A DNA stretch of 64,000 nt, taken from IMG/VR virus record IMGVR_UViG_3300025770_001492, positions 124,001 to 188,000 of that record; one strand, written 5' to 3'. This document shows positions 1 through 58,913 of the stretch, piece after piece. The translations under genes and the position numbers were made by a program. The first letter of the stretch is position 1; each line of letters begins with the position of its first letter. The notes beneath the pieces were generated by a model. That model was not told where the DNA came from. It made no database searches and worked only from the letters and a program-made list of their open reading frames with translations.

Positions 1-116
1 TACTCTGCACATGCAGCGAGCATTTCTTTCGCTTCTTCAACATCAGAAGTAAACCACAATCCAACTTGAGGATGCTTTAAGGTTCTGCCTGTCTTTTTAT
101 TCAATAAAGTATACAT
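1..116 (-). CDS. hypothetical protein (partial, runs off window)
   Basis: ATG at 116 overlaps the stop of the upstream gene; open frame MYTLLNKKTGRTLKHPQVGLWF... to the window edge. Confidence 0.65.
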   Translation of the reverse strand, partial: MYTLLNKKTGRTLKHPQVGLWFTSDVEEAKEMLAACAE

Positions 117-508
117 CAACCTATATTAGTATCAGGCGATGGAACTTGAACCGTTGAGTTAGCATTATTTTGAGCTTGTCCAAATTGTTGAGGCTGACCT
201 ATGCCGCCGCCACGAACCGAACCAGATTTTGGCGTCGAGGGTGGGGACATATTAGAAGCAGGGGGAACAGGATTCGGCTGAGTGCCGGGACTCATGTTTG
301 AAGCTGGTCTTTTGTTGTTTGTTTGCAATTTGTCAGACACATTAAATGCCGATCTGGGCTTTTTAGAACTATTTAAATTATCTTGAGGATTGATGCCTGC
401 CATTTGTGGATTAGCAGGTGCTACAGGGCTTTCTCCTGCCCTTCCTGCTGCGTTCATTCCTGTGGCACTTGCTCCCGTGCCTTGCTCAAGCCATTTTCTG
501 AATTCCAT
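116..508 (-). CDS. low-complexity (P/Q/N/G/S) protein with capsid-targeting-like N-terminus
   Basis: Starts MEFRKWLE; PASNMSP repeated; TACATA 5 nt upstream of ATG. Confidence 0.7.
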   Translation of the reverse strand: MEFRKWLEQGTGASATGMNAAGRAGESPVAPANPQMAGINPQDNLNSSKKPRSAFNVSDKLQTNNKRPASNMSPGTQPNPVPPASNMSPPSTPKSGSVRGGGIGQPQQFGQAQNNANSTVQVPSPDTNIG

Positions 509-522
509 ACTATTATGTAGAT

Positions 523-801
523 ATGGGACGTAAAAAAACGCTAATCAACAAGAAAAACAAGAAAAGATTAGAAAGCTGTGCTTTTTGCGAATGTGCAGAC
601 TATGAAATTTTAGATGTCCACAGAATAAACGAAGGAGCAGACGGAGGAAGATATACCAGTCACAACTCCTTGACTGTCTGTGCAAACTGCCATCGGAAAA
701 TTCATTCTGGAAAAATAAAAACATTCAGAAAGCATCTAAGCACTGGCGGATATGTCCTTCATTGTGAAATCGAAGGACAAGAACAGTTTTTGAAACTATG
801 A
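523..801 (+). CDS. HNH endonuclease
   Basis: CAFC...LDVHRI..GADGG...N...VCANCHRKIH. Confidence 0.85.
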   Translation: MGRKKTLINKKNKKRLESCAFCECADYEILDVHRINEGADGGRYTSHNSLTVCANCHRKIHSGKIKTFRKHLSTGGYVLHCEIEGQEQFLKL

Positions 802-1062
802 TTACTTCTTTGCGTTATTGTCAGGCAAAAATTTTGCTGCATCGGCTGGCTTTAGCTGGCCGCTATCGATTGCTTTTATAACATTATTTTTTACAGCATC
901 TTTTACGGCTTTAGAATCTCCACCACTTTTGATTGTTTTTGTGGTGTCTGCTTTAATTTGCTGGCTCAACTGAGAATTCTCTGCGTCCTTTTCCGCATTG
1001 CCCTGTTGTCCCACTTCCATCTCTTTAAGAGATACCCATTTTTCAAAAGAATAATTATTCAT
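802..1062 (-). CDS. hypothetical protein, capsid-targeting-like N-terminus
   Basis: MNNYSFEKWVSLKE; TAGATA 7 nt upstream of ATG. Confidence 0.7.
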   Translation of the reverse strand: MNNYSFEKWVSLKEMEVGQQGNAEKDAENSQLSQQIKADTTKTIKSGGDSKAVKDAVKNNVIKAIDSGQLKPADAAKFLPDNNAKK

Positions 1063-1119
1063 AGTAATTTATCTATGTTTGAAGCGTAAATATTTAAAAC
1101 TTTATTTAAGGATGGATAA

Positions 1120-1305
1120 ATGAAAAAAATACTAACTTTACTAATTTTGGGAATGTGTTTTTCCCTAACTGGATGCTCTTCCGACGACTCTTCCTGCTGC
1201 TGTGAGGGGGATAAATGCCATTGTGTGGATATCGGTGCCTGCTGCTGTGAAGAAGGCAAATGCAAAATAGAATGTGATTGCGAAGGATGCGATTGCAGCA
1301 AATAA
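1120..1305 (+). CDS. small Cys-rich (metallothionein-like) lipoprotein
   Basis: MKK + hydrophobic stretch + lipobox LTGC; mature part rich in CCC/CxC; AAGGA upstream. Confidence 0.75.
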   Translation: MKKILTLLILGMCFSLTGCSSDDSSCCCEGDKCHCVDIGACCCEEGKCKIECDCEGCDCSK

Positions 1306-1327
1306 ACGTTGCGCAGACCACATAGCA

Positions 1328-1831
1328 TCAAATAGGTTTCAACCTCGCCATAAACTCTATCTCTTCTATCATGGCGACAACGCCTTCTTTAATCAAGTCA
1401 TCTACGGCTGTCTCTACTCCGAACCTTTTTCCGGGTCGCTGTAGATGATCCTTGTAGTCGTGACACAATATATCCTTAGCTCCACATCTAATTGATCCTA
1501 ATATATCCCTCTTCACAACCTCTGCATCGTGGTTGCCATCAATAAAAGCAAAATCTATTGATTCAGTAGTGGATTCAAAAAAATTATCACTAGACATGTG
1601 ATGAACAATACAATTGGTTAATTTCCTTGCTTTTATTCCAGCTACGAAAGCTGCCTTCCATTCTTCAATAGGCCATATATCGACACAATGAATTTTGCCG
1701 TTGCATATTTCAGCCATTGGAAAAATTGATGCACCTTGATATACGCCTATGTTGACTATATTCTGATAATTGTTTTCTTTGACAATCTCAGCCATTATTT
1801 GATATTGCTTATTTGAGCATTTTCCTCTCAT
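1328..1831 (-). CDS. class I SAM methyltransferase (Methyltransf_24-like)
   Basis: IGVYQGAS, CVDIW, FAFIDGNH, LCHDY; start chosen at ATG 1831 behind TATATA. Confidence 0.8.
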   Translation of the reverse strand: MRGKCSNKQYQIMAEIVKENNYQNIVNIGVYQGASIFPMAEICNGKIHCVDIWPIEEWKAAFVAGIKARKLTNCIVHHMSSDNFFESTTESIDFAFIDGNHDAEVVKRDILGSIRCGAKDILCHDYKDHLQRPGKRFGVETAVDDLIKEGVVAMIEEIEFMARLKPI

Positions 1832-1897
1832 GCCAGTATATAGTAATATCAAATAAATTGTATTTTTAAAAAGTTTGAGGTGTGGGTAAATAAATAT

Positions 1898-2659
1898 ATG
1901 ATTAATGTCTTAATGTGTACTTATAAATCTGGCGATGTATTGCCTTTATCTTTAAAGCCTCTTGTGGACTTTCCGGGAATCACCAAGATACTCATAGCAG
2001 ATGGTCCTCATGGTGGCCCAATTAAGCCGGGAATAAAATTTGATGAACCTTCTGTCTACAAGATAGCAGAAAAGTTTAACAAAAGTGGAAAAATACATTA
2101 TGAGTATACTGACACCTGCAAAAACAGAGCATTGAAGAACAACAGTGTTTTAAAGCACACTACAGACGATTGCAAATGGATTTTAAATGTAGACTCTGAT
2201 GAGGTTTATCACGAAGATGGGTTGAAAAGGCTATTTGAATTCATCCTCACTACTGGCAATGGGTACGATAAATATAGAATCAAAACTATTGACCCTATTG
2301 ATGATTTTTTCCACGAGATCAGAATACCAGATTGGAAGCCAAGACTTTACAAATACAAAAAAGGATACATCTGTCCTCCGGGCGATTGTAGAGCACATCA
2401 ATATGTTGTTGACCCAAACAAAATAAATTCTCACAGAGAAGCAATAGAAAAATTGCCAGAAGACATTTGTAAAATATATCATCTAAATGCTTTGAGAAAC
2501 GCAAGTCTCCCACGCAAGAGAATTAAAACACTTAAGGATGGTTCATATTGTTGGAGTGGCGGCAAAATGAAATTCTATTCTGAGAAATTCGAAATAGATC
2601 GAAAAGAAATACCTAACTGTATATTGAAATTAAACAAGGATACATTGTGGACTATATAA
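1898..2659 (+). CDS. glycosyltransferase family 2-like
   Basis: N-terminal VLMCTY, ILIADG, WILNVDSDE (DxD), PRLYK. Confidence 0.75.
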   Translation: MINVLMCTYKSGDVLPLSLKPLVDFPGITKILIADGPHGGPIKPGIKFDEPSVYKIAEKFNKSGKIHYEYTDTCKNRALKNNSVLKHTTDDCKWILNVDSDEVYHEDGLKRLFEFILTTGNGYDKYRIKTIDPIDDFFHEIRIPDWKPRLYKYKKGYICPPGDCRAHQYVVDPNKINSHREAIEKLPEDICKIYHLNALRNASLPRKRIKTLKDGSYCWSGGKMKFYSEKFEIDRKEIPNCILKLNKDTLWTI

Positions 2660-3321
2660 AATGGGCACAAACCGCAATAGAAAATGCTGGCAAAGAAGTT
2701 TCTAAGCTTAACAAGGGTGCTCTTATGGTTGACGGCATGTCTTCTACGAAGAGTCGCCATCTTCTTAATAATTTATGTGCATTTCCTGAAGCCGTTTATT
2801 TTGAGATAGGAAGTTGGAAAGGATCAACCATTATTGCTGCCTCGTTTGAAAATGAAGGTAAATTCTACGCTTTAGACCAATTCTCGTCTAAGTTTAAACA
2901 AAAAGAAAGTGCATCGGTAGACTTTTATGCTAACAAAGAAAGATTCTCTAAGCATTGCGATTATACTTTCTTCGAAGAAAACAGTTGGGAATTTGACGTG
3001 TCCAAGATAGAAGAAAAGGTTAATGTTTACTTCTATGATGGAGACCACACTCCTGAAGGCACCATTAAAGCTTTTACGCATTACAATGATGTTTTCGCAG
3101 ACACATTTATTATGGTGATGGATGATTGGAATAGAGGACACATTAGAACTTCCACTAAGGCTGCACTGAAGGGCTATAAGATACTCTTTGAGCAAGAGTT
3201 TTTTACTCCCGGTGGCAAGAATGACCCACATGGAACAAAAAGACTTGGATGCATGGAAGGAAGAGAAGTTGACACTTGGTGGAATGGTCTTTACTTGGCT
3301 GTGTTAGAAAAAACATCATAG
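2647..3321 (+). CDS. class I SAM methyltransferase (Methyltransf_24-like)
   Basis: YFEIGSWKGST, YFYDGDH, VMDDW, WWNG. Confidence 0.8.
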   Translation: MDYIKWAQTAIENAGKEVSKLNKGALMVDGMSSTKSRHLLNNLCAFPEAVYFEIGSWKGSTIIAASFENEGKFYALDQFSSKFKQKESASVDFYANKERFSKHCDYTFFEENSWEFDVSKIEEKVNVYFYDGDHTPEGTIKAFTHYNDVFADTFIMVMDDWNRGHIRTSTKAALKGYKILFEQEFFTPGGKNDPHGTKRLGCMEGREVDTWWNGLYLAVLEKTS

Positions 3322-7507: not shown

Positions 7508-8938
7508 TCAAGATCGACTTGCCTTGTTTATTATTTCTGTTGTTGACATGCCTTCAAGCAATTCAACAAATCTAACGTCTTCCACCAAATCGGAGCCAAT
7601 AACGACCTTGCCTTCCCAATCTCCACCTTTTACCAAAACATCAGGCATTATCTTTTTGATCAATGCATATGGAGTTTTCTGGTCAAAGGAAACGACAAAA
7701 TCAACACATTCTAACGCTGCCAGCATCTTTACTCTATCTTCTAGAGGAATTATTGGCCGCTTGTCACCTTTTATTCTTTTAATGCTATCATCAGAATTAA
7801 TGCCAACAACTAACTTGTCGCCAAACGATTTAGCTTCTTCCAAAACTTTTAAATGACCTGAATGTAATAGATCATAACACCCATTTGTAAAAACAAGTTT
7901 ATAATCTCTTTCTTGAGGAGGCATTGTCAATTTATCTGTACTCATAAGTATATCCGATGGTTTAATAGGCTTGTTGTGAGAGTTTTGCACATAAATTGCA
8001 CCAGCCTCATAAGCAATCTCACATGCATCAATTATATCCATCCCAACAGAAAGAGCCATGGCAAGGAAGGCGGCGAAGCAATCCCCTGCCCCAATTACAG
8101 ATTTAGCCTTGATGCTATCCCCCGATCTGTAATTAAAGTGCTTCCCGCCAACCTTACCGTATACTCCGTCGCCCCCATTTGTAACAACGACAGCCATGCA
8201 ACCGATTTTAGCTTGAAAATAATTGCACTGCTCTATCGGGTCTTCAAGCCCAGAAAGCTTTTTGGCTTCAAGAAAGTTAGGCTTAAACACAGTACATCCA
8301 CGCCACTTCTCAACCGGCCCATTTTTTGGGTCTACGATTGTTATAGTGTTTCCATCAGTGAGTGATGGCCAATCGACAAAAGTACCGTGAGAGTCTTCCT
8401 CGAAAATGCCTTTTCCATAATCTGAAAAGATTGCGACATCAAAACTTGATTTAAGCCACTCTGTTTGAAGTCGATCCCTAGCTTTTATAAAGTGTTCAGA
8501 TGAAAGTCCATAATTTTCCTTTTCAACATCAAGCCTGCATAGGGGGAAATCTCTTTGATAAAACCTGTTTTTTGTTGGTATTTTTTGACCGTATGATTCT
8601 TCAATATTCACAGATTCGTAAAAATTGACTTGGTTTTCATGCTGAAAACCAAGTCCCCAACTCTCAGAATTGAAAACTTTTAATGCCAAATCGTCAACAT
8701 ATCCCAAAAGTTCAACTCTTACAGGGAAGTGTTTAAATTGGGAGACAACATTGGCAGCACCACCAGGAACTGACTTTTCTGGCGATTCCCCTTCCATCAG
8801 CATCACAGGAATAGGGAATTCAGGACTGACTCGGTTTGCGCCAACTCTAAAATAGTTGTCAATCATGCAATCGCCAATAACTCCTATTCTTGGCGATTGC
8901 GTTTTGATGTTTTCTAAAAAAGTATTAAACTTATTCAT
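7508..8938 (-). CDS. hldE: bifunctional heptose-7-phosphate kinase / heptose-1-phosphate adenylyltransferase
   Basis: PfkB domain (GDCMID, RVSPE, GGAANV, SDYGKG, VDPK, GAGD) + FTNGCYDLLHSGH nucleotidyltransferase, KGGDW, STT. Confidence 0.92.
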   Translation of the reverse strand: MNKFNTFLENIKTQSPRIGVIGDCMIDNYFRVGANRVSPEFPIPVMLMEGESPEKSVPGGAANVVSQFKHFPVRVELLGYVDDLALKVFNSESWGLGFQHENQVNFYESVNIEESYGQKIPTKNRFYQRDFPLCRLDVEKENYGLSSEHFIKARDRLQTEWLKSSFDVAIFSDYGKGIFEEDSHGTFVDWPSLTDGNTITIVDPKNGPVEKWRGCTVFKPNFLEAKKLSGLEDPIEQCNYFQAKIGCMAVVVTNGGDGVYGKVGGKHFNYRSGDSIKAKSVIGAGDCFAAFLAMALSVGMDIIDACEIAYEAGAIYVQNSHNKPIKPSDILMSTDKLTMPPQERDYKLVFTNGCYDLLHSGHLKVLEEAKSFGDKLVVGINSDDSIKRIKGDKRPIIPLEDRVKMLAALECVDFVVSFDQKTPYALIKKIMPDVLVKGGDWEGKVVIGSDLVEDVRFVELLEGMSTTEIINKASRS

Positions 8939-12880: not shown

Positions 12881-13279
12881 TTACATGGGTGACTGAGAAT
12901 CCAAGCCTTGCAGAAGTGCGGTGTTCAACTGATCAACAGGAATCGTATAAACTTTGTTATCTGGATCTTCATAAGCACTGACTCTGATTTGCTTTCCATC
13001 ATCGTCTTTTTTAAACTTTTTCTTTGTTGTATCACTTGTATCGTTCATCATCTGGATTTTAGCATGGGTTATATTTCCATCAGAATCACGATCATACCCT
13101 AAAATTTTATATCCAGATAGGTTATATGAATTTCCACCTATAGAAAACTGAGAAATAGTCTGCGGACTGTCTGCAACTAGTTCAGGGGGTATTCCTAGCT
13201 CGTCTTCAATTTGGTTTAAATAATCTATTTTTTGTTTTTGATATTCCAAAAAATCTCTAAATGATAAATTGTTGTTCAT
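12881..13279 (-). CDS. hypothetical protein, capsid-targeting-like N-terminus
   Basis: MNNNLSFRDFLE; TATATA 4 nt upstream of ATG. Confidence 0.75.
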   Translation of the reverse strand: MNNNLSFRDFLEYQKQKIDYLNQIEDELGIPPELVADSPQTISQFSIGGNSYNLSGYKILGYDRDSDGNITHAKIQMMNDTSDTTKKKFKKDDDGKQIRVSAYEDPDNKVYTIPVDQLNTALLQGLDSQSPM

Positions 13280-34167: not shown

Positions 34168-34395
34168 TCAAACAGTCTTGCTTAACCACTCTTTAAAGCT
34201 AAAGTTTTTTATAAGCAAGGAATCTATTTGTCTATTTGGATTAACAATTATTTTGTTAATTTCTTTCTTTCCTTTTTCAGATGTTATTGCTTTCCATGCT
34301 TTTTTTCTTGTCGGATAGCTCATATCTTTAAAAGATGATCTTAAATTTTTTACAATATCTTCTATTGCATCTCTTTTATTTGATTTTTTACTCAA
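34168..34395 (-). CDS. hypothetical protein with C-terminal FKEWL motif
   Basis: Ends NFSFKEWLSKTV. Confidence 0.6.
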   Translation of the reverse strand: MSKKSNKRDAIEDIVKNLRSSFKDMSYPTRKKAWKAITSEKGKKEINKIIVNPNRQIDSLLIKNFSFKEWLSKTV

Positions 34396-34396: not shown

Positions 34397-35176
34397 TTAG
34401 TACCATTTCAGAGTATTAGTGATTGTTTCTATTATTTCAGAATTTTCCTGTGTAGGAAAGAAATTCAAATCAGTATCAGAAGGACTCATGGCCCACTCAT
34501 GTTGTCCCATTCCAGACTCTATGTTGTAGTTCAATATTCGAATCATCCCTTTTTCTTTTTCGAATATTATAGAAGTTTGATTTTCCTCGACTCTTTGATG
34601 ATCTGGTGCTTGGTTGCCATGTCCTTTAACTCCCAGTCTGATGATATAATTAGAATTACTTATTTTCTTAATGCCCTCATAGATGAAGATATTCTTTGCG
34701 TTTCTTCTTATAGAATCAGCCATTTGTACAACTAGGCTTTCGAGTTTATTATATTCTCTCTTTGGAGAATCTATATCCTCTTTATTTATCACTTGCACTT
34801 CGTCTAAAACTTCATTGGCGACTATATCTTCATATCCCCCATATCCGCCTCTGTTTATTTGAAAAATTCTTTTTGTATACCAAGTTGGGTTCCCAGTTAA
34901 ATCGCTTCCTAGTCTGTCGATCATGAGATTCAGACCAGTACCACACCAGCACTTTATAGAACCGGAATTATCTCCCCATTGTACCTCATTCATGAAATTG
35001 CTACGCCCTTCATTGGTTCCAATTTTTTTAGATGCGAGTATAGAAAACAGCTTTTCTAAATCAAAAGATTTTATAGGCATATCGTTTTGATGTGACTTCT
35101 CAGCATCTTTGTTGTTTTGATCAAATCCAAAAATATCTTTAAATTCTAACCATGTTTTAAAGCCTTTAACTGTCAT
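34397..35176 (-). CDS. hypothetical protein, capsid-targeting-like N-terminus
   Basis: MTVKGFKTWLE. Confidence 0.75.
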   Translation of the reverse strand: MTVKGFKTWLEFKDIFGFDQNNKDAEKSHQNDMPIKSFDLEKLFSILASKKIGTNEGRSNFMNEVQWGDNSGSIKCWCGTGLNLMIDRLGSDLTGNPTWYTKRIFQINRGGYGGYEDIVANEVLDEVQVINKEDIDSPKREYNKLESLVVQMADSIRRNAKNIFIYEGIKKISNSNYIIRLGVKGHGNQAPDHQRVEENQTSIIFEKEKGMIRILNYNIESGMGQHEWAMSPSDTDLNFFPTQENSEIIETITNTLKWY

Positions 35177-35534: not shown

Positions 35535-35565
35535 TTTATCTCCTTTGTACTATATTTATGAACTT

Positions 35566-38229: not shown

Positions 38230-39384
38230 TTATTGGTTGTAATTAACTAGAATCACATCTCCAGACTCAGGGGCAGTATTAAATGTTATAATGGCTCCTG
38301 ATAAAGTGTAATCATTTGCACCACCAGTATTCTGGATGATGCCATTTAGATAAATACAATCAGTATTTGACAAAGGTGTTGCCGCCATTGTGAAGTCTGT
38401 ATTTGATCCATTAACTGTTCCTGTAGGAGTTTCTCTTGTTACCCAAGTATCTGTAACATATGAATCCGCAATGGTAAAGGCTGCACTTGAACTCATTGTC
38501 AGGTCGCCCCCAACTGCGTTGTAGGTAGTGTCAGATGCACCTTGTCCAACAAGCAATGCAGCAGAAGCTCCATCGGCAAGAGAAAGCCCACTAGAACCTA
38601 GAGCGAGAGTTGATCCATCAAGATTAACTTCAATATCATCAGCATTTACGGTAATTCCACCCGAAGTTGCAGCACCAATATTAACATCACCGCCAGATGC
38701 TGCTAGACCGCTTCCTGCACCGACTGAAATACCGCCAGCACCAAGGTTTAGTCCCGAATTAGTATCCAGATTTATTGTGATGTCGTTTGCATTTGCTGTT
38801 AATCCACCGCTTGTTGCGGCAACAACATCTACTGTTTCATCAGTCTTCGTAAGACCAGCACCAGCTACAAGATCGCCTAAAAGTTGTCCGGTTTGAGAGA
38901 ATTTTTCAAAAGTCAGAGCGGTTGTATCTAGAGTGATAGATCCGGTTGTAGTTAGCAACCAGCCAGTGTCTGCGTTTGAAGTTCCTTCTTCAATGAATGC
39001 AAACATGCCAGTTGTAACTTCGGCACTTGTGTTTGCGTCTGAAGATCTGACAGGAGCACCAGATGCGGTTACATCATAAATACCGTTTTGGTTACCAGTT
39101 GATTGATTCTTAAGAAGAATTCTATCGTCTGCTACAAGAGTCACTCCGTCTACGGTTTGACCTGCTGTGAATGCTGAAGCAAAAGTTCCATTAGACGTAG
39201 TTGCTACCCTAATGCTTTCTTTAAAATCAATTACACCACCTGCAACTTGAGCATCAACATATGCTTTCGTTGCAGCTTCCTGATTTGCTGTCGGATCTGT
39301 AAGATTGACAATTTTATTGGTTTGCAAGTCAAGATTGCCAGTAAATCTTAACTGACGAGCACCATCTGTTTGTGTTACGGCCAT
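38230..39384 (-). CDS. tail-fibre-like structural protein, paralog 1 (384 aa)
   Basis: AATK.YVD, DFKES.RVATT, DR.L.KNQ....NGIY, AGAGL/SGGL repeats, C-terminal beta-sandwich. Confidence 0.8.
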   Translation of the reverse strand: MAVTQTDGARQLRFTGNLDLQTNKIVNLTDPTANQEAATKAYVDAQVAGGVIDFKESIRVATTSNGTFASAFTAGQTVDGVTLVADDRILLKNQSTGNQNGIYDVTASGAPVRSSDANTSAEVTTGMFAFIEEGTSNADTGWLLTTTGSITLDTTALTFEKFSQTGQLLGDLVAGAGLTKTDETVDVVAATSGGLTANANDITINLDTNSGLNLGAGGISVGAGSGLAASGGDVNIGAATSGGITVNADDIEVNLDGSTLALGSSGLSLADGASAALLVGQGASDTTYNAVGGDLTMSSSAAFTIADSYVTDTWVTRETPTGTVNGSNTDFTMAATPLSNTDCIYLNGIIQNTGGANDYTLSGAIITFNTAPESGDVILVNYNQ

Positions 39385-39436: not shown

Positions 39437-40591
39437 TTATTTGGCATAATTAACTAATAAAACATCTCCGGTTTCAGGAGCACTATTGAAAGTGATTGAG
39501 TTTGTTGAAATGGTGTAATCATTTGAACCGCCAACATTTTGAAGTATACCATTTAAATGGACACATTCTGTTCCACTTAAAGGCGTTGCTGCCAACGTGT
39601 AAGAAGCATTGCTTCCATTTACAAGTCCTGATGGAACTTCTCTGTAAACCCAAGTATCTGTAACATATGAATCCGCAATGGTAAAGGCTGCACTTGAACT
39701 CATTGTCAGGTCGCCCCCAACTGCGTTGTAAGTCGAATCAGATGCACCTTGTCCAACAAGCAATGCAGCAGAGGCTCCATCGGCAAGAGAAAGACCACTA
39801 GCACCTAGAGCGAGAGTTGATCCGTCAAGATTTACTTGGATATCATCAGCATTTACGGTAATTCCACCCGAAGTTGCAGCACCAACATTAACGTCACCGC
39901 CAGATGCTGCCAAACCACTTCCTGCACCGACTGAGATACCGTTAGCACCAAGGTTTAGTCCCGAATTAGTATCTAGATTTATTGTGATGTCGTTTGCATT
40001 TGCTGTTAATCCACCGCTTGTTGCGGCAACAACATCTACTGTTTCAGCAGTCTTCGTAAGACCAGCACCAGCTACAAGATCTTCTAAAAGTTGTCCAACT
40101 TCACTGAATTTTTCAAAAGTCAGAGCCGTTGTATCTAAGGTGATAGTTCCAGTTGTAGTTAGTAACCATCCGGTTTTTGCGTTTGAAGTTCCTTCTTCTA
40201 CAAAACAAAACAGTCCACTTGTAACTTCTGCACTTGTGTCTGCATCTGATGACCTACTTGGAGCACCAGTAGCTTGTACTATGTAGATTCCGTTCTCGTC
40301 TCCTGATGACTGGTTTTTGATTAAAATTCTATCATTAGTTGCAAGAGTCACTCCGTCTATAACGTCGTTATTTTCAAAATCACTAGCTAGAGTTCCTGTT
40401 GCCGTAGTTGCAACTCTGACACTTTCTTTAAAATCAATTACACCACCTGCAACTTGAGCATCAACATATGATTTCGTAGCAGCGTCTTGATTTGCTGTCG
40501 GATCTGTAAGATTGACAATTTTATTGGTTTGCAAGTCAAGATTACCAGTAAATCTTAATTGACGAGCACCATCTATTTGTGTTACGGCCAT
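39437..40591 (-). CDS. tail-fibre-like structural protein, paralog 2 (384 aa)
   Basis: Colinear and highly similar to 38230..39384. Confidence 0.8.
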   Translation of the reverse strand: MAVTQIDGARQLRFTGNLDLQTNKIVNLTDPTANQDAATKSYVDAQVAGGVIDFKESVRVATTATGTLASDFENNDVIDGVTLATNDRILIKNQSSGDENGIYIVQATGAPSRSSDADTSAEVTSGLFCFVEEGTSNAKTGWLLTTTGTITLDTTALTFEKFSEVGQLLEDLVAGAGLTKTAETVDVVAATSGGLTANANDITINLDTNSGLNLGANGISVGAGSGLAASGGDVNVGAATSGGITVNADDIQVNLDGSTLALGASGLSLADGASAALLVGQGASDSTYNAVGGDLTMSSSAAFTIADSYVTDTWVYREVPSGLVNGSNASYTLAATPLSGTECVHLNGILQNVGGSNDYTISTNSITFNSAPETGDVLLVNYAK

Positions 40592-43705: not shown

Positions 43706-43960
43706 ATGGAATTTAGATATTGGATAGAATCTGAAGCGAAAGCACTGGCGTCTAGAGACATGGTGCTTAATTTTCTTCAAGATAAATTAAACATTAATGA
43801 TCCCGAAGCAATCCTAAATATGTCTACAGATCAGATAGACTCAGGCGTTATTGCAGATCTTTCCCAAAGAGGAATTATATCTTCTGATGATGAGCTTCAA
43901 TCTATAATCAAGAACGGAATTAAGATATCTGAATTAATAAACATTCTTTCAAAGCAATGA
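43706..43960 (+). CDS. hypothetical protein, capsid-targeting-like N-terminus
   Basis: MEFRYWIESE; TATATA 7 nt upstream of ATG. Confidence 0.75.
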   Translation: MEFRYWIESEAKALASRDMVLNFLQDKLNINDPEAILNMSTDQIDSGVIADLSQRGIISSDDELQSIIKNGIKISELINILSKQ

Positions 43961-47888: not shown

Positions 47889-47904
47889 ACATAAATAATT
47901 TATT

Positions 47905-49884
47905 ATGTTTAGAAATTGGATAGAAAATAAAGAACAGTTAAATAAATCGGTCAACAAGTCAATTGACGAAATTGTTTATGGCGATATGGATGAAAAGACA
48001 GATGCTCTGTCTAAAAAAGAGCATCCTCTCTTTAAAGGAAGATTTAAGGTAGACCCACCACCTTCCAACACCTCGAAAGAAACTATCGAGGAACTTAAAG
48101 AGCTAGAAAAGATGAGTCATTTTAAGTCCAAAGATATCATGAAAGATATGAAGGATTTTGATGTGGCTCAAGTCAAGCCATTTGAAGATTATCTTAAACA
48201 AAATTCTCTAGATTTCGATTTCAAAATGCTTAACAAAATACTTAAGCAAGGCGAAATACTTGGACTAAAGCTTAAAAAGAAGTTCAACAGACCAAGACCG
48301 CATCAGATCGCACCCAAGATGGGTCTAAACATAATGTATCATGATTTGAAAACAGACGATACGCCAGCTTATCCTTCAAATCACTCTTTGATTTCTTCTT
48401 TAATTGCTCTATATCTTTCTTCGCTATATCCGAAACATGAAAAAGGATTCATGGACATTGCAGACAGGATCGGAATTAGCCGATTATATGGAGGGACTCA
48501 TTATCGAAGCGATCATGATTCTGCAAGGAAACTAGCTAAGGACATCATGAAGTCTTGGAAACCTGCTGTTAAGCCTGCAAAATATTCGTTCACTGAGTGG
48601 ATGCTGAAGCTCGAAGACCAAGGTATCCACGCATTCATGCGAGTGGCAAGTGAAAAATATAAAGACGACAGAAGTAAAGACATTCTTGTTATTTATGGAA
48701 ATACGACGCCAATTAAAGACAAACTAAAAGAAATAACAAAATTTACTTGGAACCAAGGTGGCTATTGGAGCACGGGCAGGTGGAGTCTGAATAATGATGT
48801 GATTCAAAAACTCATAGAGCTAACTGGAATAACTGATTTGAAAGAAATCATAGATGCTGGACCGCAATTTAACGCTGATTCGACTGAGGCAGAAGAAGAG
48901 AAAGATGCACCCAAGAGTCAAGTTGATGCGATTCTTGGTAACATGGAACAGGAAATTGAAAACGCTAAAGGCAAAGCGGGCGGTAAAGCAAAACAAATTC
49001 TCACCATGATTGAAAACTATCTTGAAAAATTGGCCAACTTGGTTGATGAAGAAATCAAATCAGGATTCGTTAAAGACTTTATGCGGTTTGCTGCTAAATT
49101 CCACAACTACTCTTTCAATAATCAAATGTTGATTTACGCACAAAAGAAAGATGCAACTTACGTAAACTCTGAAAGTCGTTGGCTTAAACTCGGAAGAGCA
49201 GTTACCAATAAGGATCAAGGAATTATAATTCTTGCGCCTATGACAGGAAAGAAAAAAGAAAAAGATGCAGATTTAGAGGGGCAAAAGGAAGAAAGAAAAT
49301 TTGTATTCTTCAGACCCGTTAAAGTTTATGATATTTCTTCAACACAAGTCATATCAGGACAAGAAGACAAGGCAAAAGTGTTTGAGCCAAATGATTGGCG
49401 ACAAGATACTGATGAAAACACTGAAGAACTTACCCTGCTCATCAATGCAGGAATAGAAATAGCCAAGCAAAAAGATATATCTATCGACTATGAGGAACTA
49501 GCTCAAGGTACGGGCGGCTACTCTGCGGGTGGAAAGATTGTAATCAACAACACCTATGGTGGAATCAACAAGTTTAGCACTCTCGTACATGAACTCGCCC
49601 ATGAAATACTCCATCAAGTAATGAAGCCAGAAGAAAGAGCAAAAGAAAACAAAAGAGATTTTGAATATGATGCTGAATCTGTGGCCTATATCGTTCTTCA
49701 ATACTTTGGATTTGAAACCAAAGACTCTCCAAGATATATCGCTCTATGGAAAGGCGACAGCAAAGCAGTTAAAGGAAGAAGAGAAAATATCAGCAAAGCA
49801 TCAAAGGAAATCATTCAAGGCATAAAAAAGAATGTCGAGGATATGGTAATTCAAGATGATCTCCCTGAAGAAGATGCTGCCTAA
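47905..49884 (+). CDS. polyvalent fusion: PAP2-type phosphatase + ArdC-N ssDNA-binding + zincin metallopeptidase
   Basis: K..FNRPRP / YPSNH / SR..G.HY.SD; FHNYSFNNQMLI..Q..AT..W..LGR.V; HELAH...EYDAES. Confidence 0.85.
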   Translation: MFRNWIENKEQLNKSVNKSIDEIVYGDMDEKTDALSKKEHPLFKGRFKVDPPPSNTSKETIEELKELEKMSHFKSKDIMKDMKDFDVAQVKPFEDYLKQNSLDFDFKMLNKILKQGEILGLKLKKKFNRPRPHQIAPKMGLNIMYHDLKTDDTPAYPSNHSLISSLIALYLSSLYPKHEKGFMDIADRIGISRLYGGTHYRSDHDSARKLAKDIMKSWKPAVKPAKYSFTEWMLKLEDQGIHAFMRVASEKYKDDRSKDILVIYGNTTPIKDKLKEITKFTWNQGGYWSTGRWSLNNDVIQKLIELTGITDLKEIIDAGPQFNADSTEAEEEKDAPKSQVDAILGNMEQEIENAKGKAGGKAKQILTMIENYLEKLANLVDEEIKSGFVKDFMRFAAKFHNYSFNNQMLIYAQKKDATYVNSESRWLKLGRAVTNKDQGIIILAPMTGKKKEKDADLEGQKEERKFVFFRPVKVYDISSTQVISGQEDKAKVFEPNDWRQDTDENTEELTLLINAGIEIAKQKDISIDYEELAQGTGGYSAGGKIVINNTYGGINKFSTLVHELAHEILHQVMKPEERAKENKRDFEYDAESVAYIVLQYFGFETKDSPRYIALWKGDSKAVKGRRENISKASKEIIQGIKKNVEDMVIQDDLPEEDAA

Positions 49885-53183: not shown

Positions 53184-53186
53184 CAG

Positions 53187-53260
53187 TAGGGCCGACTGGA
53201 CTCGAACCAGTAACCGCCGGTTTATGAGACCGGTGAACTAACCAATTGTTCTACAGCCCC
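53187..53260 (-). tRNA. tRNA with CAT anticodon (elongator Met or Ile2); CCA not encoded
   Basis: GGGGCTG/CGGCCCT acceptor, CCGGT-CTCATAA-ACCGG anticodon arm, ACTGG-TTCGAGT-CCAGT T-arm. Confidence 0.92.
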
Positions 53261-53637: not shown

Positions 53638-53641
53638 TCTT

Positions 53642-55324: not shown

Positions 55325-55881
55325 TTGTATTTCCTGTATATCGCACTATTGTCGTTCCAGAGTGGGTCGCTTTCGTCGATATACGATTCGACTAAAGAGA
55401 TTTTATGCTCGTTTTTGTTTGCCCATTTTTCAAGCCCGCTCCAAGAGTCTTTTAAAAACCTCCAACAATCGGTCGGATATCCATGATACGGACCAGTGGA
55501 AGGAGCTTGGATATAAATTAATCCATCTTTTTTCAAAACTCTGCATATTTCTAAGAATGTAACCCAAAACATATCATCATGTTCAAAGCAGGAAGATGAT
55601 ATTATTATATCAAAAGATTCATCGCTGAATGGCATTTCATGCGCCGACCCAACCACATCGACGTTTCTGCCTGAATCTTGGTCTAACCCTATATATTCCT
55701 TAACCGGAACGCCACCGTCAGCAGGATTCCAGCGGCTAGGATCAATGAATATAGGTCGCATGTTAAACCCCTGAATATCCAGAGAACCCACGTCCAGAAC
55801 TGATTTGCCCTCTAACAGCGGATCATTCTTGCAATATTTTTCATAGAACATCAAAACGTTTTTCAGTGCAGATTTGTGCAT
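55321..55881 (-). CDS. class I SAM methyltransferase
   Basis: VLDVGS, YIGLD, FDIIISSSCFEHD, RVLK..G, YHGYP.DCWRF. Confidence 0.88.
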   Translation of the reverse strand: MHKSALKNVLMFYEKYCKNDPLLEGKSVLDVGSLDIQGFNMRPIFIDPSRWNPADGGVPVKEYIGLDQDSGRNVDVVGSAHEMPFSDESFDIIISSSCFEHDDMFWVTFLEICRVLKKDGLIYIQAPSTGPYHGYPTDCWRFLKDSWSGLEKWANKNEHKISLVESYIDESDPLWNDNSAIYRKYK

Positions 55882-56071
55882 TTTCTATAACCACTTTTAT
55901 TTTTTTTCCGACTTGAATAATGTCTCCGACATGGAATTCGTGTTCCATATTCAGATTTTGAACCGGAAATCCATTTAGCTTTATAGCTTGATCAGAAACA
56001 AGCCTTCGGCCCTCAGCCATACTAACTAAAGCCTTATTTTTAAGCAATATCTCATTTATCGTAGTTTTCAT
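55841..56071 (-). CDS. stand-alone S4 RNA-binding domain (TyrRS C-terminal-like)
   Basis: LVSMAEGRRLV...AIKLNG...GDIIQVGKK. Confidence 0.75.
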   Translation of the reverse strand: MKTTINEILLKNKALVSMAEGRRLVSDQAIKLNGFPVQNLNMEHEFHVGDIIQVGKKIKVVIENAQICTEKRFDVL

Positions 56072-56304
56072 CTCTGTTCTTTCCGAAATTAGAGGAAACC
56101 CATTTATTTTGAAGCATGTTAGCATAAATATTAACATGCTTCAACGTTATCACACAACTGCTCCGATGGCATAATGAATTCAATTTGGGAAAATTAATGA
56201 GTCTCACCGAACCCACTTGACAGATCTGAAAAAATCTATACAACTTTGGAACGATGTTGACTATTATGTCATTACGTGCTGTAACTTAATGTAAGGAGTT
56301 AGTT

Positions 56305-56649
56305 ATGAAAAACGCAGCTAAGTTTTCGTTAATGGCGGCAGTTGTTCTGTCTACCATGACAATTATGAGTGCCGACGCAGATGCAGGATTGTTCTGTCGT
56401 CAGCCAGTTCGAACAATGTTGAAAAACACTGTTTGCCGAGTTAAAACTTGTCGTCCCGTTCGATCAATGGCTTGCAATACAGCCTGTCGAGTTCGCACGG
56501 TCAAGCCGGTTCGAAGAGTTCTTCGTGGCTCAGTGAATGTTGTTCGTTCTGTTTTGCCACCGTATGGTTGTTGTAATAGTTGTTCAACTGCAACTGTAAC
56601 AGAAACAGAAACACAAAAAGCACCTGCACCTGCACCTCCTGCTAATTAG
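56305..56649 (+). CDS. secreted Cys/Arg-rich protein with PVR repeats
   Basis: AAGGAG RBS; signal peptide ending ADA; QPVR/RPVR/KPVR; own terminator. Confidence 0.8.
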   Translation: MKNAAKFSLMAAVVLSTMTIMSADADAGLFCRQPVRTMLKNTVCRVKTCRPVRSMACNTACRVRTVKPVRRVLRGSVNVVRSVLPPYGCCNSCSTATVTETETQKAPAPAPPAN

Positions 56650-56676
56650 CAGGAAGCTAGGTTAAAGTAAAAGAGC

Positions 56677-56704
56677 AAAAAGCCCGCCATTCGGCGGGCT
56701 TTTT
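56677..56704. terminator. bidirectional intrinsic terminator
   Basis: A5-GCCCGCC-ATTC-GGCGGGC-T5. Confidence 0.9.
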
Positions 56705-56707
56705 CTA

Positions 56708-56935
56708 TTATCTATTACACTCATCGCATGGATATCGAGTATCGTCCGAATAGCAGTCATGTGGATCATTTGCTGGCCCATCATAGTGGTTCAACTCATG
56801 CGACCAAACCCATCCAGAGTCATTGCACTTTTCGCACAATGGGTATGGGCAATTTTTGCATCCATTATGACAGCATTTCTTTTGCTTGAGCAGGAACTCT
56901 CTGCTGAATGGTTGTTTTTCATATGAGTTTTTCAT
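56708..56935 (-). CDS. small Cys-rich protein (DUF5522-like)
   Basis: FLL....CCHNGCKNCPY plus two further CxxC. Confidence 0.6.
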   Translation of the reverse strand: MKNSYEKQPFSREFLLKQKKCCHNGCKNCPYPLCEKCNDSGWVWSHELNHYDGPANDPHDCYSDDTRYPCDECNR

Positions 56936-57785
56936 ATTTGTCCCATATATCATCTAAGTTTTCAGTAGGCTGAAATCTTTGATAATAAGAAGAGAAGTGT
57001 GCCATGATGGGTCCTGCGTGTACGCAGTTTATTTTTCCTAGTCTTTTAGGGATTGCCTTCGTAAGATCTAATTCTTCATTCATTGCGACACTTTTGAATT
57101 GTCCTCCAAACCAACTGATGCAATTAATGAGAACTCTTTCCTGCTGTCTAAGCAGGACATTTCCTATTTTGTATTTTTCTAAATTGTTATTTTTTACATC
57201 TTCAATGAATTGATTATGTATATCGCATATAGCTCTGCCTTTATAAAAGCAGTTTGTACAGTTCCATTCATATTTGCAATCTTTCAGGGATTCCAAATCT
57301 AGGACTTTTCTTTGATATAAAATGTAATTTAAAAAAGGACTATTCACGATCAGCGGATAGACCAGCAGATATTCTTCGTTTTCGACTCTGAACTTCAGTA
57401 GTTCTTCGATTGCGTTATCTTGCATGTAGCAGATATCATCATCGAATCTAATATAGACTGCATTTTCATCTCTGCAATATTTGAAAAAGTTGTGTATTCT
57501 ATAGCATCTGTACCCATGATCTCTGTGGGAGCAGAATTTGTGCTGTTCTTCAGGAAACTCCCAAGCCTTATCATTTGCTTCTTTTATTTCTATTTTTGGA
57601 TTTTCACTTTTCATTTGATGAATATAATCGACATCTTCTGGGTTATCGGTATTAAGCCAGATTTGCCACTCATCAATGATGTCGCACTTTTCTACATATT
57701 TTCTTAATAGTTTTAAGTTTTTCTTTCGTCCTGCCGGTGTTACGGCAACAACTTTGTATATTTTACTTTTTCCTGAAATAGGCAT
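56919..57785 (-). CDS. GT-A fold glycosyltransferase-like protein
   Basis: VTPAGR, WLNT, YIRFDDDI, IVN, INCI.W.G, HFS...Q. Confidence 0.7.
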   Translation of the reverse strand: MPISGKSKIYKVVAVTPAGRKKNLKLLRKYVEKCDIIDEWQIWLNTDNPEDVDYIHQMKSENPKIEIKEANDKAWEFPEEQHKFCSHRDHGYRCYRIHNFFKYCRDENAVYIRFDDDICYMQDNAIEELLKFRVENEEYLLVYPLIVNSPFLNYILYQRKVLDLESLKDCKYEWNCTNCFYKGRAICDIHNQFIEDVKNNNLEKYKIGNVLLRQQERVLINCISWFGGQFKSVAMNEELDLTKAIPKRLGKINCVHAGPIMAHFSSYYQRFQPTENLDDIWDKYEKLI

Positions 57786-58425
57786 GTACTGATCCTTGAA
57801 GTGTTTTTACATTTAAATCATTTATTGTTTCTGGTTTGTCGTTTAAAAATTCATCCACGGCTTCTTTTGCTCCAGGAAAATCTATTAAACCATAGTCATC
57901 TATCACGCAAACAGAACCCTTTGTCAGTCTAGGATAGACGCCTTCAATGCTTGTCTTAATAGATTCATACAAGTCTCCGTCTAAATGTGCAAAACATATT
58001 TGATCGGGAAGATGTTTTGGAACTGTATTTTCAAACCAGCCTGGAATTACTTTTTTGCATCCTAATAGATCGAATACCGAAAGATTTTTAAGAAGAACGT
58101 CTGGTGATGTTGCAAACATGCCGGGTTTTGCCCAAGGATGATTTTCGTATTTCCATGGACCACCTCGGCTAGGCTTGTCTTTTTCGGAAAAATCAGGCAA
58201 TCCTTGAAATGAATCAAGTAGATATAGATCTTTGTCAGATTTTTGCCACTCCATTACTGCCGCTATTACTCTTGTGGATAATCCGTCGCATGTCCCCAAT
58301 TCAGCAACATCGCCTTCCACGCCATATTCCAGCACTTGAGTAACAAGGTGGTAATGGTTCATTAGACGAGAAGAATTCATCCTTGGGTCGTTGATATTTA
58401 ATAGGGCTTTTATTTTATTGTTCAT
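57763..58425 (-). CDS. TylF/MycF/NovP-family O-methyltransferase
   Basis: GDVAELG, DSFQGLP, PGWFENT, AHLDGDLYES, IDDYG. Confidence 0.9.
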   Translation of the reverse strand: MNNKIKALLNINDPRMNSSRLMNHYHLVTQVLEYGVEGDVAELGTCDGLSTRVIAAVMEWQKSDKDLYLLDSFQGLPDFSEKDKPSRGGPWKYENHPWAKPGMFATSPDVLLKNLSVFDLLGCKKVIPGWFENTVPKHLPDQICFAHLDGDLYESIKTSIEGVYPRLTKGSVCVIDDYGLIDFPGAKEAVDEFLNDKPETINDLNVKTLQGSVHAYFRKK

Positions 58426-58484
58426 TTTTAGATCCTTCGATTTTAAATTAGTAGAATTTCGATTTTAATCATAAATAATGTATC

Positions 58485-58913
58485 ATGAATTTTAAAGACT
58501 TTATTGTATCAGAAGAAGATATGGCACCGATGGGAGACCCTATGGGCGGTGGAATGCCGATGGGAGACCCTATGGGCGGTGGAATGCCGATGGACCCTAT
58601 GGGTGGAGCACCCCCAATGGACCCTATGGGAGGGATGGGTGGAGGAGCACCCCCAATGGACCCTATGGGAGGGATGGGTGGAGGAGCACCAGGCGGCGTT
58701 CAACCACCAATACAATTTAAACCTAATTCTGTTTGGGATGTTTTAGATAAAATATTAAATGGAGAGCCTGTTAACGATAAAGAAGATGAAGAAAAAGAAA
58801 AAGAAAAAGAAGTAGATCAATCTGGACAAGAAAATTTAGATATGTTAAGTTCCCCTCAACAGCAAGAACCGGGAATGGCCCCCACTGGTCAAGTTGAGAA
58901 TCCTCAGCTTTAA
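58485..58913 (+). CDS. Met/Gly/Pro repeat protein, capsid-targeting-like N-terminus
   Basis: MNFKDFIVSEE; (PMGDPMGGGM) and (APPMDPMGGMGGG) repeats; TAAATA 7 nt upstream of ATG. Confidence 0.8.
   Translation: MNFKDFIVSEEDMAPMGDPMGGGMPMGDPMGGGMPMDPMGGAPPMDPMGGMGGGAPPMDPMGGMGGGAPGGVQPPIQFKPNSVWDVLDKILNGEPVNDKEDEEKEKEKEVDQSGQENLDMLSSPQQQEPGMAPTGQVENPQL

What the first reader, a model, noticed from the sequence alone, without database searches (positions are those of the whole stretch)
116..58913. Dispersed family of proteins with a T4 capsid-targeting-like peptide (F-x-x-W/F-L/I..E)
Seen: unrelated proteins start MEFRKWLE (116..508), MNNYSFEKWVSLKE (802..1062), MNNNLSFRDFLE (12881..13279), MTVKGFKTWLE (34397..35176), MEFRYWIESE (43706..43960), MFRNWIENKE (47905..49884) and MNFKDFIVSEE (58485..58913). 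The motif also occurs C-terminally (FSFKEWL, 34168..34395) and internally (YSFTEWMLKLE). Known: T4 internal proteins use an N-terminal capsid-targeting sequence (MKTYQEFIAE type) that the prohead protease removes after Glu. Inference: a portable tag routes a cargo set into the head for injection, which predicts part of the injected proteome.
Basis: partly seen in the sequence, partly recalled or inferred. Interest (0 to 1): 0.75.

Follow-up and report, generated by a model that had tools for sequence, protein, structure and literature searches.

The report
Capsid-targeting-like tag on phage proteins
An uncultured marine giant phage related to T4 puts the same short peptide (F-K/R-x-W/F-L/I-E) at the start of two dozen unrelated proteins; the peptide closely resembles the T4 signal that loads proteins into the phage head, so it may mark the proteins this phage injects into its host.

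Summary
All quoted peptides are at the stated coordinates. In the 245.5-kb virus record holding the window, about 24-27 ORFs start with M-x(0-5)-F-[KR]-x-[WF]-[LIV]-(x0-3)-E. An annotation-free count gives 24 observed against 3.1 expected (P=5e-14).

Selection acts on the peptide, not the DNA: nine Leu/Ile/Val codons are used and the offset from Met varies. The carriers share nothing else.

The tag is conserved in orthologues down to 40% identity. In the PAP2-ArdC protein it also sits at a gene-fusion junction. AlphaFold2 places it in a disordered N-terminal extension.

The own record is only 49% complete and lacks head genes. Its relatives, including published LR756511.1, carry the tag together with the T4-type prohead protease (Peptidase_S77); two IMG/VR relatives also match Pfam Gp23, and LR756511.1 encodes a 78%-identical capsid protein.

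The tag matches T4 IPII/IPIII (MKTYQEFIAE) at the residues shown to matter. Glu, not Asp, is enriched just after it.

Packaging and cleavage remain untested. The phage also encodes ClpXP, so a degron or other docking motif is the main rival.

Best reading: an expanded CTS-like cargo tag, confidence about 0.55.

The parts
116..508 (-). Tagged ORF, 130 aa, MEFRKWLEQ...; basic (pI 10.3), Pro/Gln/Asn-rich and low-complexity; tag at 485-502
   Evidence: no Pfam or PHROG family
802..1062 (-). Tagged ORF, 86 aa, MNNYSFEKWVSLKE...; tag at 1021-1047; CATAGATA box at 1070-1077, 7 nt upstream of the ATG, with no Shine-Dalgarno sequence
7508..8938 (-). HldE-like bifunctional sugar kinase/nucleotidyltransferase, 476 aa, with a weaker tag-like start MNKFNTFLEN (8912-8929); doubtful member
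   Evidence: Pfam PfkB + CTP_transf_like; PWM score 15.5; the G001 orthologue has only a partial motif
12881..13279 (-). Tagged ORF, 132 aa, acidic, MNNNLSFRDFLEY...; tag at 13244-13261, offset 6 residues from Met
34397..35176 (-). Tagged ORF, 259 aa, MTVKGFKTWLEFKDIFGF...; tag at 35144-35161. It has a Shine-Dalgarno sequence and is the second-to-last gene of an operon of tail-fibre-like genes. A CATAAATA box lies at 35553-35560.
   Evidence: 35 homologous clusters; in the 32-sequence alignment F6 and E11 are nearly invariant (at least 90%) down to 40% identity. AF2: residues 1-33 have pLDDT<50 and the globular fold starts near residue 36. Neighbours. Box.
34168..34395 (-). 75-aa ORF ending ...NFSFKEWLSKTV*; C-terminal copy of the motif at 34183-34197
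   Evidence: conserved as FSFREWI in an 87%-identical relative
43706..43960 (+). Tagged ORF, 84 aa, acidic, MEFRYWIESE...; tag at 43712-43729; TATATA box upstream and no Shine-Dalgarno sequence
47905..49884 (+). 659-aa fusion protein: tag 1 (MFRNWIENKE, 47908-47925), PAP2 phosphatase domain, tag 2 (YSFTEWMLKLE, 48589-48615), then an ArdC-N plus HExxH anti-restriction-like domain. CATAAATA box at 47890-47897, 7 nt before the ATG.
   Evidence: Pfam PAP2 and ArdcN, PHROG anti-restriction. Stand-alone ArdC-like homologues start with the tag that aligns to tag 2; W232 is invariant and F229 is at least 90% conserved. Box.
58485..58913 (+). Tagged ORF, 142 aa, MNFKDFIVSEE..., followed by Met/Gly/Pro repeats; tag at 58491-58514; CATAAATA box at 58470-58477, 7 nt before the ATG

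Best explanation
The motif is a portable peptide address tag of about 8-12 residues, normally at the N-terminus. Its consensus is M-x(0-5)-F-[K/R]-x-[W/F]-[L/I]-(x0-3)-E. It is used by a clade of uncultured huge myophages of the T4 superfamily; the window's own phage is marine.

Most likely it is the clade's version of the T4 capsid-targeting sequence. On this reading the short amphipathic segment (F, W/F and L/I on one face) docks the carrier onto the scaffolding core while the prohead assembles. The T4-type prohead protease (Peptidase_S77) then cuts after the following Glu. The mature cargo stays in the head and leaves with the DNA at infection. Cargo would include small charged or low-complexity proteins, a Nudix hydrolase, a nucleotidyltransferase, and a PAP2 phosphatase fused to an ArdC-like anti-restriction protein.

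Shown:
- The tag exists, is selected at the peptide level and sits on unrelated proteins.
- It is conserved in orthologues and is gained or lost as a module.
- It is retained at a fusion junction and lies in a disordered extension.
- It is followed specifically by Glu.
- It co-occurs with T4-type head genes in the clade.

Inferred:
- Binding to the scaffold core.
- Cleavage by the protease.
- Presence in virions and injection.
For: 1. Peptide-level selection. Nine different Leu/Ile/Val codons occur at the aliphatic position, TGG or TTT/TTC at the aromatic position, and AAA/AGA at the basic position. The offset from Met varies from 1 to 6 residues.

2. Enrichment at starts. 69-fold, P=3.5e-27; annotation-free, 24 against 3.1 expected, P=5e-14.

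3. Portability.
- The carriers share no other similarity.
- The Nudix protein is tagged here but not in relative G001.
- The internal tag of 47905..49884 aligns to the N-terminal tags of stand-alone ArdC-like homologues.

4. Conservation. In the 259-aa family F6 and E11 are nearly invariant (at least 90%) down to 40% identity.

5. Structure. Residues 1-33 of that protein are predicted disordered, ahead of a confident globular domain.

6. Clade context.
- G001 shares 143 of 378 proteins with the window's record; the tail sheath is 69% identical.
- G001, G002 and LR756511.1 encode Peptidase_S77 (E about 1e-25 to 7e-28). G001 and G002 match Pfam Gp23 (E about 1e-86), and LR756511.1 encodes a capsid protein 78% identical to G001's.
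- All carry the tag, at 0.2-0.9 per 10 kb. T4 has 0.12, and S-SSM7 and G003 have about 0.

7. Match to T4.
- ipII and ipIII start MKTYQEFIAEA.
- Residues 4 and 7 are needed for targeting and 8 and 10 for processing (PMC9026906).
- The gp23 maturation site after Glu65 reads FGSFLTE|A, the same pattern.
- G001 has five proteins starting MKTF, for example MKTFQEWLNEN. Three of them form a run 4 kb from the capsid gene, under a TATAAATA box.

8. Glu specificity. Glu makes up 33 of 150 residues after the tag against 7.4% background (P=1e-8), while Asp is not enriched. 24 of 25 tags have Glu within 6 residues, against 37% expected.

9. Plausible cargo. An ArdC-like anti-restriction domain plus small charged proteins.
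Against: - There is no direct evidence of packaging or cleavage.
- The window's own record (CheckV 49% complete) has no Peptidase_S77 or gp23 match. A 25-kb extension found in another contig also has none. The head machinery is therefore inferred from relatives.
- Tagged genes are dispersed among replication and metabolic genes. Across 28 head-module loci of the clade they are no denser than genome-wide (0.54 against 0.61 per 10 kb).
- Some carriers are ordinary enzymes that are not obvious head cargo: HldE-like here, and carbamoyltransferase, FMN reductase and a CCA-adding-type enzyme in G001.
- In this phage Glu usually follows the aliphatic residue directly (15 of 25), whereas T4 has one residue between.
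- G003 is another huge phage with Peptidase_S77 and gp23, and it lacks this tag.
- The phage encodes ClpX and ClpP.
- The expression time of tagged genes is unknown. No T4 gp55 homologue was detected.
Confidence: 0.55

Rival explanations
1. The tag is a short linear docking motif for a different hub. The leading candidate is a degron read by the phage's own ClpXP, for timed removal of early effectors. Another possibility is an address for some other phage assembly or compartment, rather than the prohead core.
For: - The record encodes a ClpX homologue (1659-2948, with AAA_2 and the ClpX zinc finger) and a ClpP homologue (116495-117208). T4 and S-SSM7, which lack the expanded tag family, have no ClpP.
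- The tag is terminal (N-terminal, once C-terminal) and disordered, as degrons are.
- Carriers are dispersed among non-structural genes and include enzymes.
Against: - G003 has ClpP but no tag family.
- The Glu-specific enrichment after the tag and the residue-by-residue match to the T4 CTS and to the gp23 cleavage context have no explanation under a ClpX model.
- By eye the tag does not fit the published ClpX N-motif classes (own knowledge, not tested).
Confidence: 0.2
2. The peptide motif is a by-product of a nucleic-acid signal at the 5' end of the genes. Candidates are a promoter or initially transcribed region, a translation-start enhancer for leaderless mRNAs, or a recombination handle for cassette shuffling.
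For: - Tagged genes are enriched for an A/T box (CATAAATA or TATATA) 4-8 nt upstream of the ATG without a Shine-Dalgarno sequence. The counts are 8/19 against 20/359 in this record (P=1e-5) and 12/33 against 39/675 in G001 (P=6e-7).
- Conserved regulatory cassettes are known to mediate shuffling in T4-type genomes (PMC2839356, seen).
Against: - Synonymous and conservative codon variety at every motif position, and a variable offset from the ATG.
- More than half of the tagged genes lack the box, and several have ordinary Shine-Dalgarno sequences.
- About 20 box-bearing genes have no tag.
- The motif is also conserved internally at a fusion junction and at a C-terminus.
Confidence: 0.07
3. There is no shared function. 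The similar starts are a compositional or gene-calling artefact in an AT-rich genome.
For: The genome is 37.7% G+C, and Phe, Lys, Asn and Ile codons are common.
Against: - The annotation-free test with a six-frame background gives P=5e-14, and the reversed motif occurs once.
- AT-rich controls are not enriched: G003 at 30% G+C, S-SSM7 and T4.
- The tag is conserved in orthologues.
Confidence: 0.02

Closest known systems
Bacteriophage T4 capsid-targeting sequence of internal proteins IPII and IPIII (MKTYQEFIAE; Mullaney and Black 1996, as reviewed in PMC9026906 and PMC3012670)
   Same: - A short tag at the extreme N-terminus of otherwise unrelated proteins.
- The same spacing: aromatic-x-x-aromatic-aliphatic-(x)-Glu.
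- A phage lineage with Peptidase_S77 protease, a scaffold and a gp23-type capsid.
- An anti-restriction-type protein among the carriers.
   Different: - The consensus is F-K/R-x-W/F-L/I-E rather than Y-Q-E-F-I-A-E.
- Glu is mostly adjacent to the aliphatic residue.
- There are at least 24 carriers in half a genome, against 2 (ipII, ipIII) plus one tag-like protein of unknown function (gp61.1) found by this scan of T4.
- Carriers include enzymes and a two-tag fusion protein, and there is one C-terminal copy.
- Many of the genes look leaderless.
- Function is untested.
T4 gp21 maturation sites in gp23 (FGSFLTE|A after Glu65) and gp24 (MAKINELLRE)
   Same: A hydrophobic pair followed by x-Glu. 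The clade's capsid protein starts MNARFLNE|A and has RLMNE|A at residue 52.
   Different: Those are cleavage sites in shell proteins, not cargo addresses. Cleavage in this clade is only inferred.
Long N-terminal propeptides of ejection and inner-body proteins in phiKZ-like giant phages (SPN3US, 201phi2-1; PMC5694885)
   Same: Many head-internal proteins are processed after Glu by a related prohead protease. The propeptides are thought to target proteins into the prohead.
   Different: Those propeptides are 80-160 residues long, are not one shared short motif, and are cut at S/A/G-x-E. They belong to a different phage lineage.
Cargo-loading peptides of encapsulins and encapsulation peptides of bacterial microcompartments
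   Same: A short amphipathic terminal peptide on a flexible linker directs diverse cargo into a protein shell.
   Different: They have different sequences, are usually not cleaved, and serve cellular compartments rather than a virion. This comparison rests on own knowledge and was not tested.

Membership tests
T4-type capsid-targeting sequence (CTS) | A short peptide at the extreme N-terminus, shared by otherwise unrelated proteins | tested here: met
T4-type capsid-targeting sequence (CTS) | Sequence determinants of IPIII: aromatic at positions 4 and 7 (targeting), aliphatic at 8 and Glu at 10 (processing) | tested here: met
   The tag logo is F, x, x, W/F, L/I, then Glu within 0-3 residues. 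The T4 sequence was read from NC_000866. The determinants come from PMC9026906. The spacing of Glu differs by one residue in most copies.
T4-type capsid-targeting sequence (CTS) | The phage encodes the T4-type prohead protease (Peptidase_S77), a scaffold and a gp23-type capsid protein | tested here: inconclusive
   Absent from the window's own 49%-complete record and from a 25-kb extension. Peptidase_S77 is present in relatives G001, G002 and LR756511.1, all of which carry the tag. G001 and G002 match Pfam Gp23, and LR756511.1 has a capsid protein 78% identical to G001's.
T4-type capsid-targeting sequence (CTS) | Removed by the prohead protease after Glu | not testable with these tools
   Indirect only: Glu, not Asp, is enriched after the tag.
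T4-type capsid-targeting sequence (CTS) | Carriers are present inside virions, and the tag is sufficient to package a foreign protein | not testable with these tools
   The phage is uncultured. No cultured relative carries a homologue of the 259-aa tagged protein.
ClpX N-terminal degron | A cognate ClpXP is available | tested here: met
   ClpX and ClpP homologues are present in the record.
ClpX N-terminal degron | The motif matches a known ClpX recognition class, and the carrier is degraded | not tested
   No tool was available. G003 has ClpP without the tag family.
Sec/Tat signal peptide | A hydrophobic h-region of 7 or more residues after a basic n-region | tested here: not met
   Tags are followed by Glu and polar residues. 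Plainly hydrophobic starts were excluded from the counts.

The most novel reading that the evidence does not exclude
One short peptide defines a large packaged and injected effector set in a widespread clade of huge phages; the window's member is found in many seawater metagenomes. The set would be on the order of 25-50 proteins per genome. New cargo would be captured in plug-and-play fashion through cassettes made of a promoter abutting the ATG (probably giving leaderless mRNA) plus the tag. Tandem tags would let the prohead protease cut fusion proteins into separate cargoes. If so, the injected proteome of uncultured giant phages could be read directly from sequence.
Probability: 0.35. Interest if true: 0.8.

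Novelty: new variant of a known kind. Interest (0 to 1): 0.6.

Why it matters
If the tag is a capsid address, it gives a sequence-only way to list the proteins that an uncultured, widespread marine giant phage carries into its host. That list would include candidate anti-defence effectors such as the ArdC-like protein.

It would also extend the T4 CTS principle from a few internal proteins to dozens of cargoes. The tag would become a compact handle for loading foreign proteins into large capsids.

In the library searched, no listed paper linked capsid targeting with jumbo, huge or cyanophages.

Tried and rejected
- **Megablast against phage records.** A 5-kb stretch of the window found no close relative.
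- **Pfam and PHROG scans of tagged proteins.** Most have no family.
- **ESM Atlas look-alikes of the 259-aa protein.** Only weak leads to the papain-like or deamidase fold, all scoring below 0.9. Not used.
- **Foldseek of its AF2 model against the PDB.** No match at E<0.001.
- **RNA evidence.** Four marine metatranscriptome runs gave only five contig fragments of 150-270 nt on a 6-kb stretch. No 5' ends or timing could be read.
- **T4 gp55 late sigma as a query.** No hit in G000-G002, so the late nature of the CATAAATA box is unproven.
- **Finding the head module of the window's own phage.** One end matched no other contig. The other end was extended by 25 kb (contig G004) without reaching gp23.
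- **Idea that tagged genes cluster at the head module.** This looked true in G001, with 7-8 tagged genes within 15 kb. It was not general across 28 loci of the clade.
- **Idea that tagged proteins are more variable than average.** 7 of 20 have a G001 homologue against 143 of 378 overall, so there is no difference.
- **G003.** It has S77, gp23 and ClpP but no tag family, so it does not separate the two main hypotheses.


Full report
**Where the window lies**

The window is bases 124,001-188,000 of a 245,522-bp IMG/VR virus record. The record has 37.7% G+C and CheckV rates it 49% complete. Nearly identical DNA is present in many seawater metagenomes, so this is an uncultured marine phage.

The window encodes:
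- replication genes: a DnaB-like helicase, family A polymerase pieces, helicases and an SbcC-like protein;
- a run of tail-fibre or collagen-like structural genes.

Elsewhere the record has a tail sheath and a baseplate hub, so it is a myophage.

**The observation**

Scanning the whole record shows that the family is larger. About 24-27 ORFs start with M-x(0-5)-F-[K/R]-x-[W/F]-[L/I/V], usually followed by Glu. Eight of these are in the window. One of the eight, the HldE-like enzyme at 7508..8938, is a weak case.

Two counts show the enrichment:
- In heuristically called genes the strict motif occurs 18 times in the first 8 positions and 6 times in the other ~71,600 positions. This is 69-fold, P=3.5e-27.
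- A count that needs no gene calls gives 24 hits at 2,375 ATG-initiated ORFs of at least 40 aa in six frames. The expectation is 3.1, P=5e-14, and the reversed motif hits once.

**Peptide or DNA signal**

Selection is on the peptide.
- The aliphatic position uses nine different Leu, Ile or Val codons.
- The second aromatic is TGG or TTT/TTC.
- The basic position is AAA or AGA.
- The motif sits 1 to 6 residues from the Met.

The carriers have no other similarity to each other. Most are 46-260 aa, polar, strongly basic or acidic, sometimes low-complexity, and match no Pfam or PHROG family.

The carriers that do have domains are:
- a Nudix hydrolase, whose domain starts at residue 21;
- a DUF6036-type nucleotidyltransferase;
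- the 659-aa protein at 47905..49884.

**The fusion protein**

The 659-aa protein has a PAP2 phosphatase domain and an ArdC-N plus HExxH anti-restriction-like domain.

Related phages encode the ArdC-like part as a stand-alone protein. The N-terminal tag of that protein aligns with the internal motif here; W232 is invariant and F229 is at least 90% conserved. The window protein is therefore a fusion of two tagged genes, and it kept both tags.

The C-terminal copy at 34168..34395 is conserved as FSFREWI in an 87%-identical relative. It is probably functional rather than debris.

**Conservation and structure**

The 259-aa tagged protein (34397..35176) has 35 homologous clusters in metagenomes. 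In the 32-sequence alignment F6 and E11 of the tag are nearly invariant (at least 90%) down to 40% identity.

AlphaFold2 on that alignment gives a confident globular domain from about residue 36. Residues 1-33 have pLDDT below 50. The tag is thus a conserved short motif in a flexible N-terminal extension. The fold has no PDB match.

**What kind of phage**

The own record has no match to Pfam Gp23 or Peptidase_S77. Relatives found through the 259-aa protein do.

G001 (458.8 kb, 91% complete) and G002 (298.6 kb) encode a Peptidase_S77 protease (E about 1e-25). It lies next to a coiled-coil, scaffold-like protein and a gp23-type capsid protein (E about 1e-86).

G001 shares 143 of 378 proteins with the window's record, and the sheath is 69% identical. 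Its capsid protein is 78% identical to that of LR756511.1, a published 595-kb uncultured phage, and about 29% identical to those of cyanophages and other T4-like phages. LR756511.1 also matches Peptidase_S77. More than 300 IMG/VR contigs carry this capsid gene.

The clade is therefore a widespread group of huge T4-superfamily myophages. The window's phage very probably has the same head genes in its missing half.

**The tag is a clade character**

Scoring with a position weight matrix gives these densities per 10 kb:

| Genome or set | Tags per 10 kb |
|---|---|
| Window's record | 0.94 |
| G001 | 0.61 |
| 28 head-module loci of the clade | 0.54 |
| LR756511.1 | 0.20 |
| T4 | 0.12 |
| G003 (a more distant huge phage with S77 and gp23) | 0.03 |
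| Cyanophage S-SSM7 | 0 |

Orthologue pairs between the window's record and G001 usually keep the tag. The Nudix protein is the exception: it is tagged here and not in G001.

**Comparison with T4**

The T4 record was read directly. ipII and ipIII start MKTYQEFIAEA, and the 54-aa gp61.1 of unknown function starts MKTFKEFIKED.

The review PMC9026906 reports that only the first 10 residues of IPIII are needed for packaging. Residues 4 and 7 matter for targeting, residues 8 and 10 matter for processing, and Asp at position 10 blocks cleavage.

Those positions are Tyr, Phe, Ile and Glu. The tag here has Phe, Trp/Phe, Leu/Ile and Glu with the same spacing. The T4 gp23 maturation site after Glu65 reads FGSFLTE|A, which is the same pattern again.

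G001 even has five proteins that start MKTF, such as MKTFQEWLNEN. Three of them form a run 4 kb from the capsid gene, under a TATAAATA box.

In the six residues after the hydrophobic pair, Glu is 33 of 150 against a 7.4% background (P=1e-8). Asp is at background level. 24 of 25 tags have a Glu within six residues, against 37% expected. This is what a Glu-specific protease site predicts.

**Best explanation**

The tag is most likely the clade's capsid-targeting and processing signal. It would load a large and diverse cargo set into the prohead for delivery with the DNA.

Shown:
- the existence of the tag, its peptide-level selection and its portability;
- its conservation, its disordered context and the Glu signature;
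- its co-occurrence with T4-type head genes.

Inferred:
- docking on the scaffold core;
- cleavage;
- presence in virions and injection.

I put this reading at about 0.55.

**What weighs against it**

- The head genes are inferred from relatives.
- Tagged genes are scattered and not enriched at head modules.
- Some carriers are ordinary enzymes: HldE-like here, and a carbamoyltransferase, an FMN reductase and an HD plus poly(A)-polymerase-type enzyme in G001.
- Glu spacing differs slightly from T4.
- The phage encodes its own ClpX and ClpP, so a degron or another docking function cannot be excluded (about 0.2). G003 has ClpP, S77 and gp23 but no tag family, so it does not separate the two readings.
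- A nucleic-acid explanation is unlikely given the codon data. Even so, there is a real association with a promoter-like box, described next.

**A side finding**

About 40% of tagged genes have an A/T box (CATAAATA or TATATA) ending 4-8 nt before the ATG, with no Shine-Dalgarno sequence. Only about 6% of other genes do (P=1e-5 here, 6e-7 in G001). The same arrangement is seen in LR756511.1.

The box resembles the T4 late promoter TATAAATA (own knowledge), and at that spacing the mRNAs would be leaderless or nearly so. Similar boxes precede the head operon of G001 and a structural operon here.

Timing could not be established. No gp55 homologue was found, and the metatranscriptome contigs were too sparse.

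**Novelty**

The T4 CTS and the polymorphic internal proteins of T-even phages are well known. In the library searched, none of the listed papers that mention jumbo, huge or cyanophages also mentions capsid targeting.

Three things look new:
- the tenfold expansion of the family;
- the enzyme and fusion cargoes;
- the cassette-like gene starts.

I rate this a new variant of a known kind, interest 0.6.

Noticed in passing
window 47890-47897, 58470-58477, 1070-1077 (minus strand), 35553-35560 (minus strand); genome-wide in G000, G001 and LR756511.1: A CATAAATA or TATATA box ends 4-8 nt upstream of the ATG of many genes that lack a Shine-Dalgarno sequence. It resembles the T4 late promoter TATAAATA and implies leaderless or near-leaderless mRNAs. 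It is enriched at tagged genes: 8/19 against 20/359 here, and 12/33 against 39/675 in G001.
   Followed up: partly
G000:1659-2948 (minus strand) and G000:116495-117208 (minus strand), outside the window: The phage encodes its own ClpX (AAA_2 plus the ClpX zinc finger) and ClpP homologues. Relatives G001, G002 and G003 also have ClpP.
   Followed up: partly
G000:117459-122479 (minus strand), just upstream of the window: A PrkA-like AAA kinase (704 aa), a 410-aa ORF that may be YeaH/DUF444 (judged by eye only) and a SpoVR-like protein (530 aa) lie in a row next to ClpP. The PrkA-like and SpoVR-like proteins are 61-63% identical to their G001 homologues, and ClpP lies beside them there too. This is a stress-response module that is unusual in a phage.
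   Followed up: partly
window 38230-39384 and 39437-40591 (minus strand): Two tandem 384-aa paralogues share the start MAVTQ(T/I)DGARQLRFTGNLDLQTNKI. They match PHROG head-decoration and tail-fibre families. They are followed by 366-aa and 510-aa fibre-like genes and then the tagged 259-aa gene.
   Followed up: no
T4 NC_000866 18966-19130 (minus strand), gene 61.1: T4 itself has a third CTS-like start, MKTFKEFIKED, on a 54-aa protein of unknown function next to the primase gene.
   Followed up: no
G001:442142-443587 (locus L064:2142-3587): The clade's gp23-type capsid protein starts MNARFLNE|AREIE and has RLMNE|AMTD at residues 48-52. Both resemble T4 gp21 cleavage contexts, which suggests a shorter propeptide than T4's 65 residues.
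   Followed up: no
window 53186-53260 (minus strand): A tRNA-Met (CAT) gene.
   Followed up: no
window 7508-8938 (minus strand): A bifunctional HldE-like heptose kinase/adenylyltransferase. Many sugar-nucleotide and glycosyltransferase-like genes lie elsewhere in the record, which suggests surface-sugar or DNA-modification chemistry.
   Followed up: no
window 34397-35176, residues 12-18 of the product: Directly after the tag, the 259-aa family has a second highly conserved disordered motif, KDIFGF(D/E). G17 and F18 are invariant, and D14 and F16 are at least 90% conserved. Its role is unknown.
   Followed up: no
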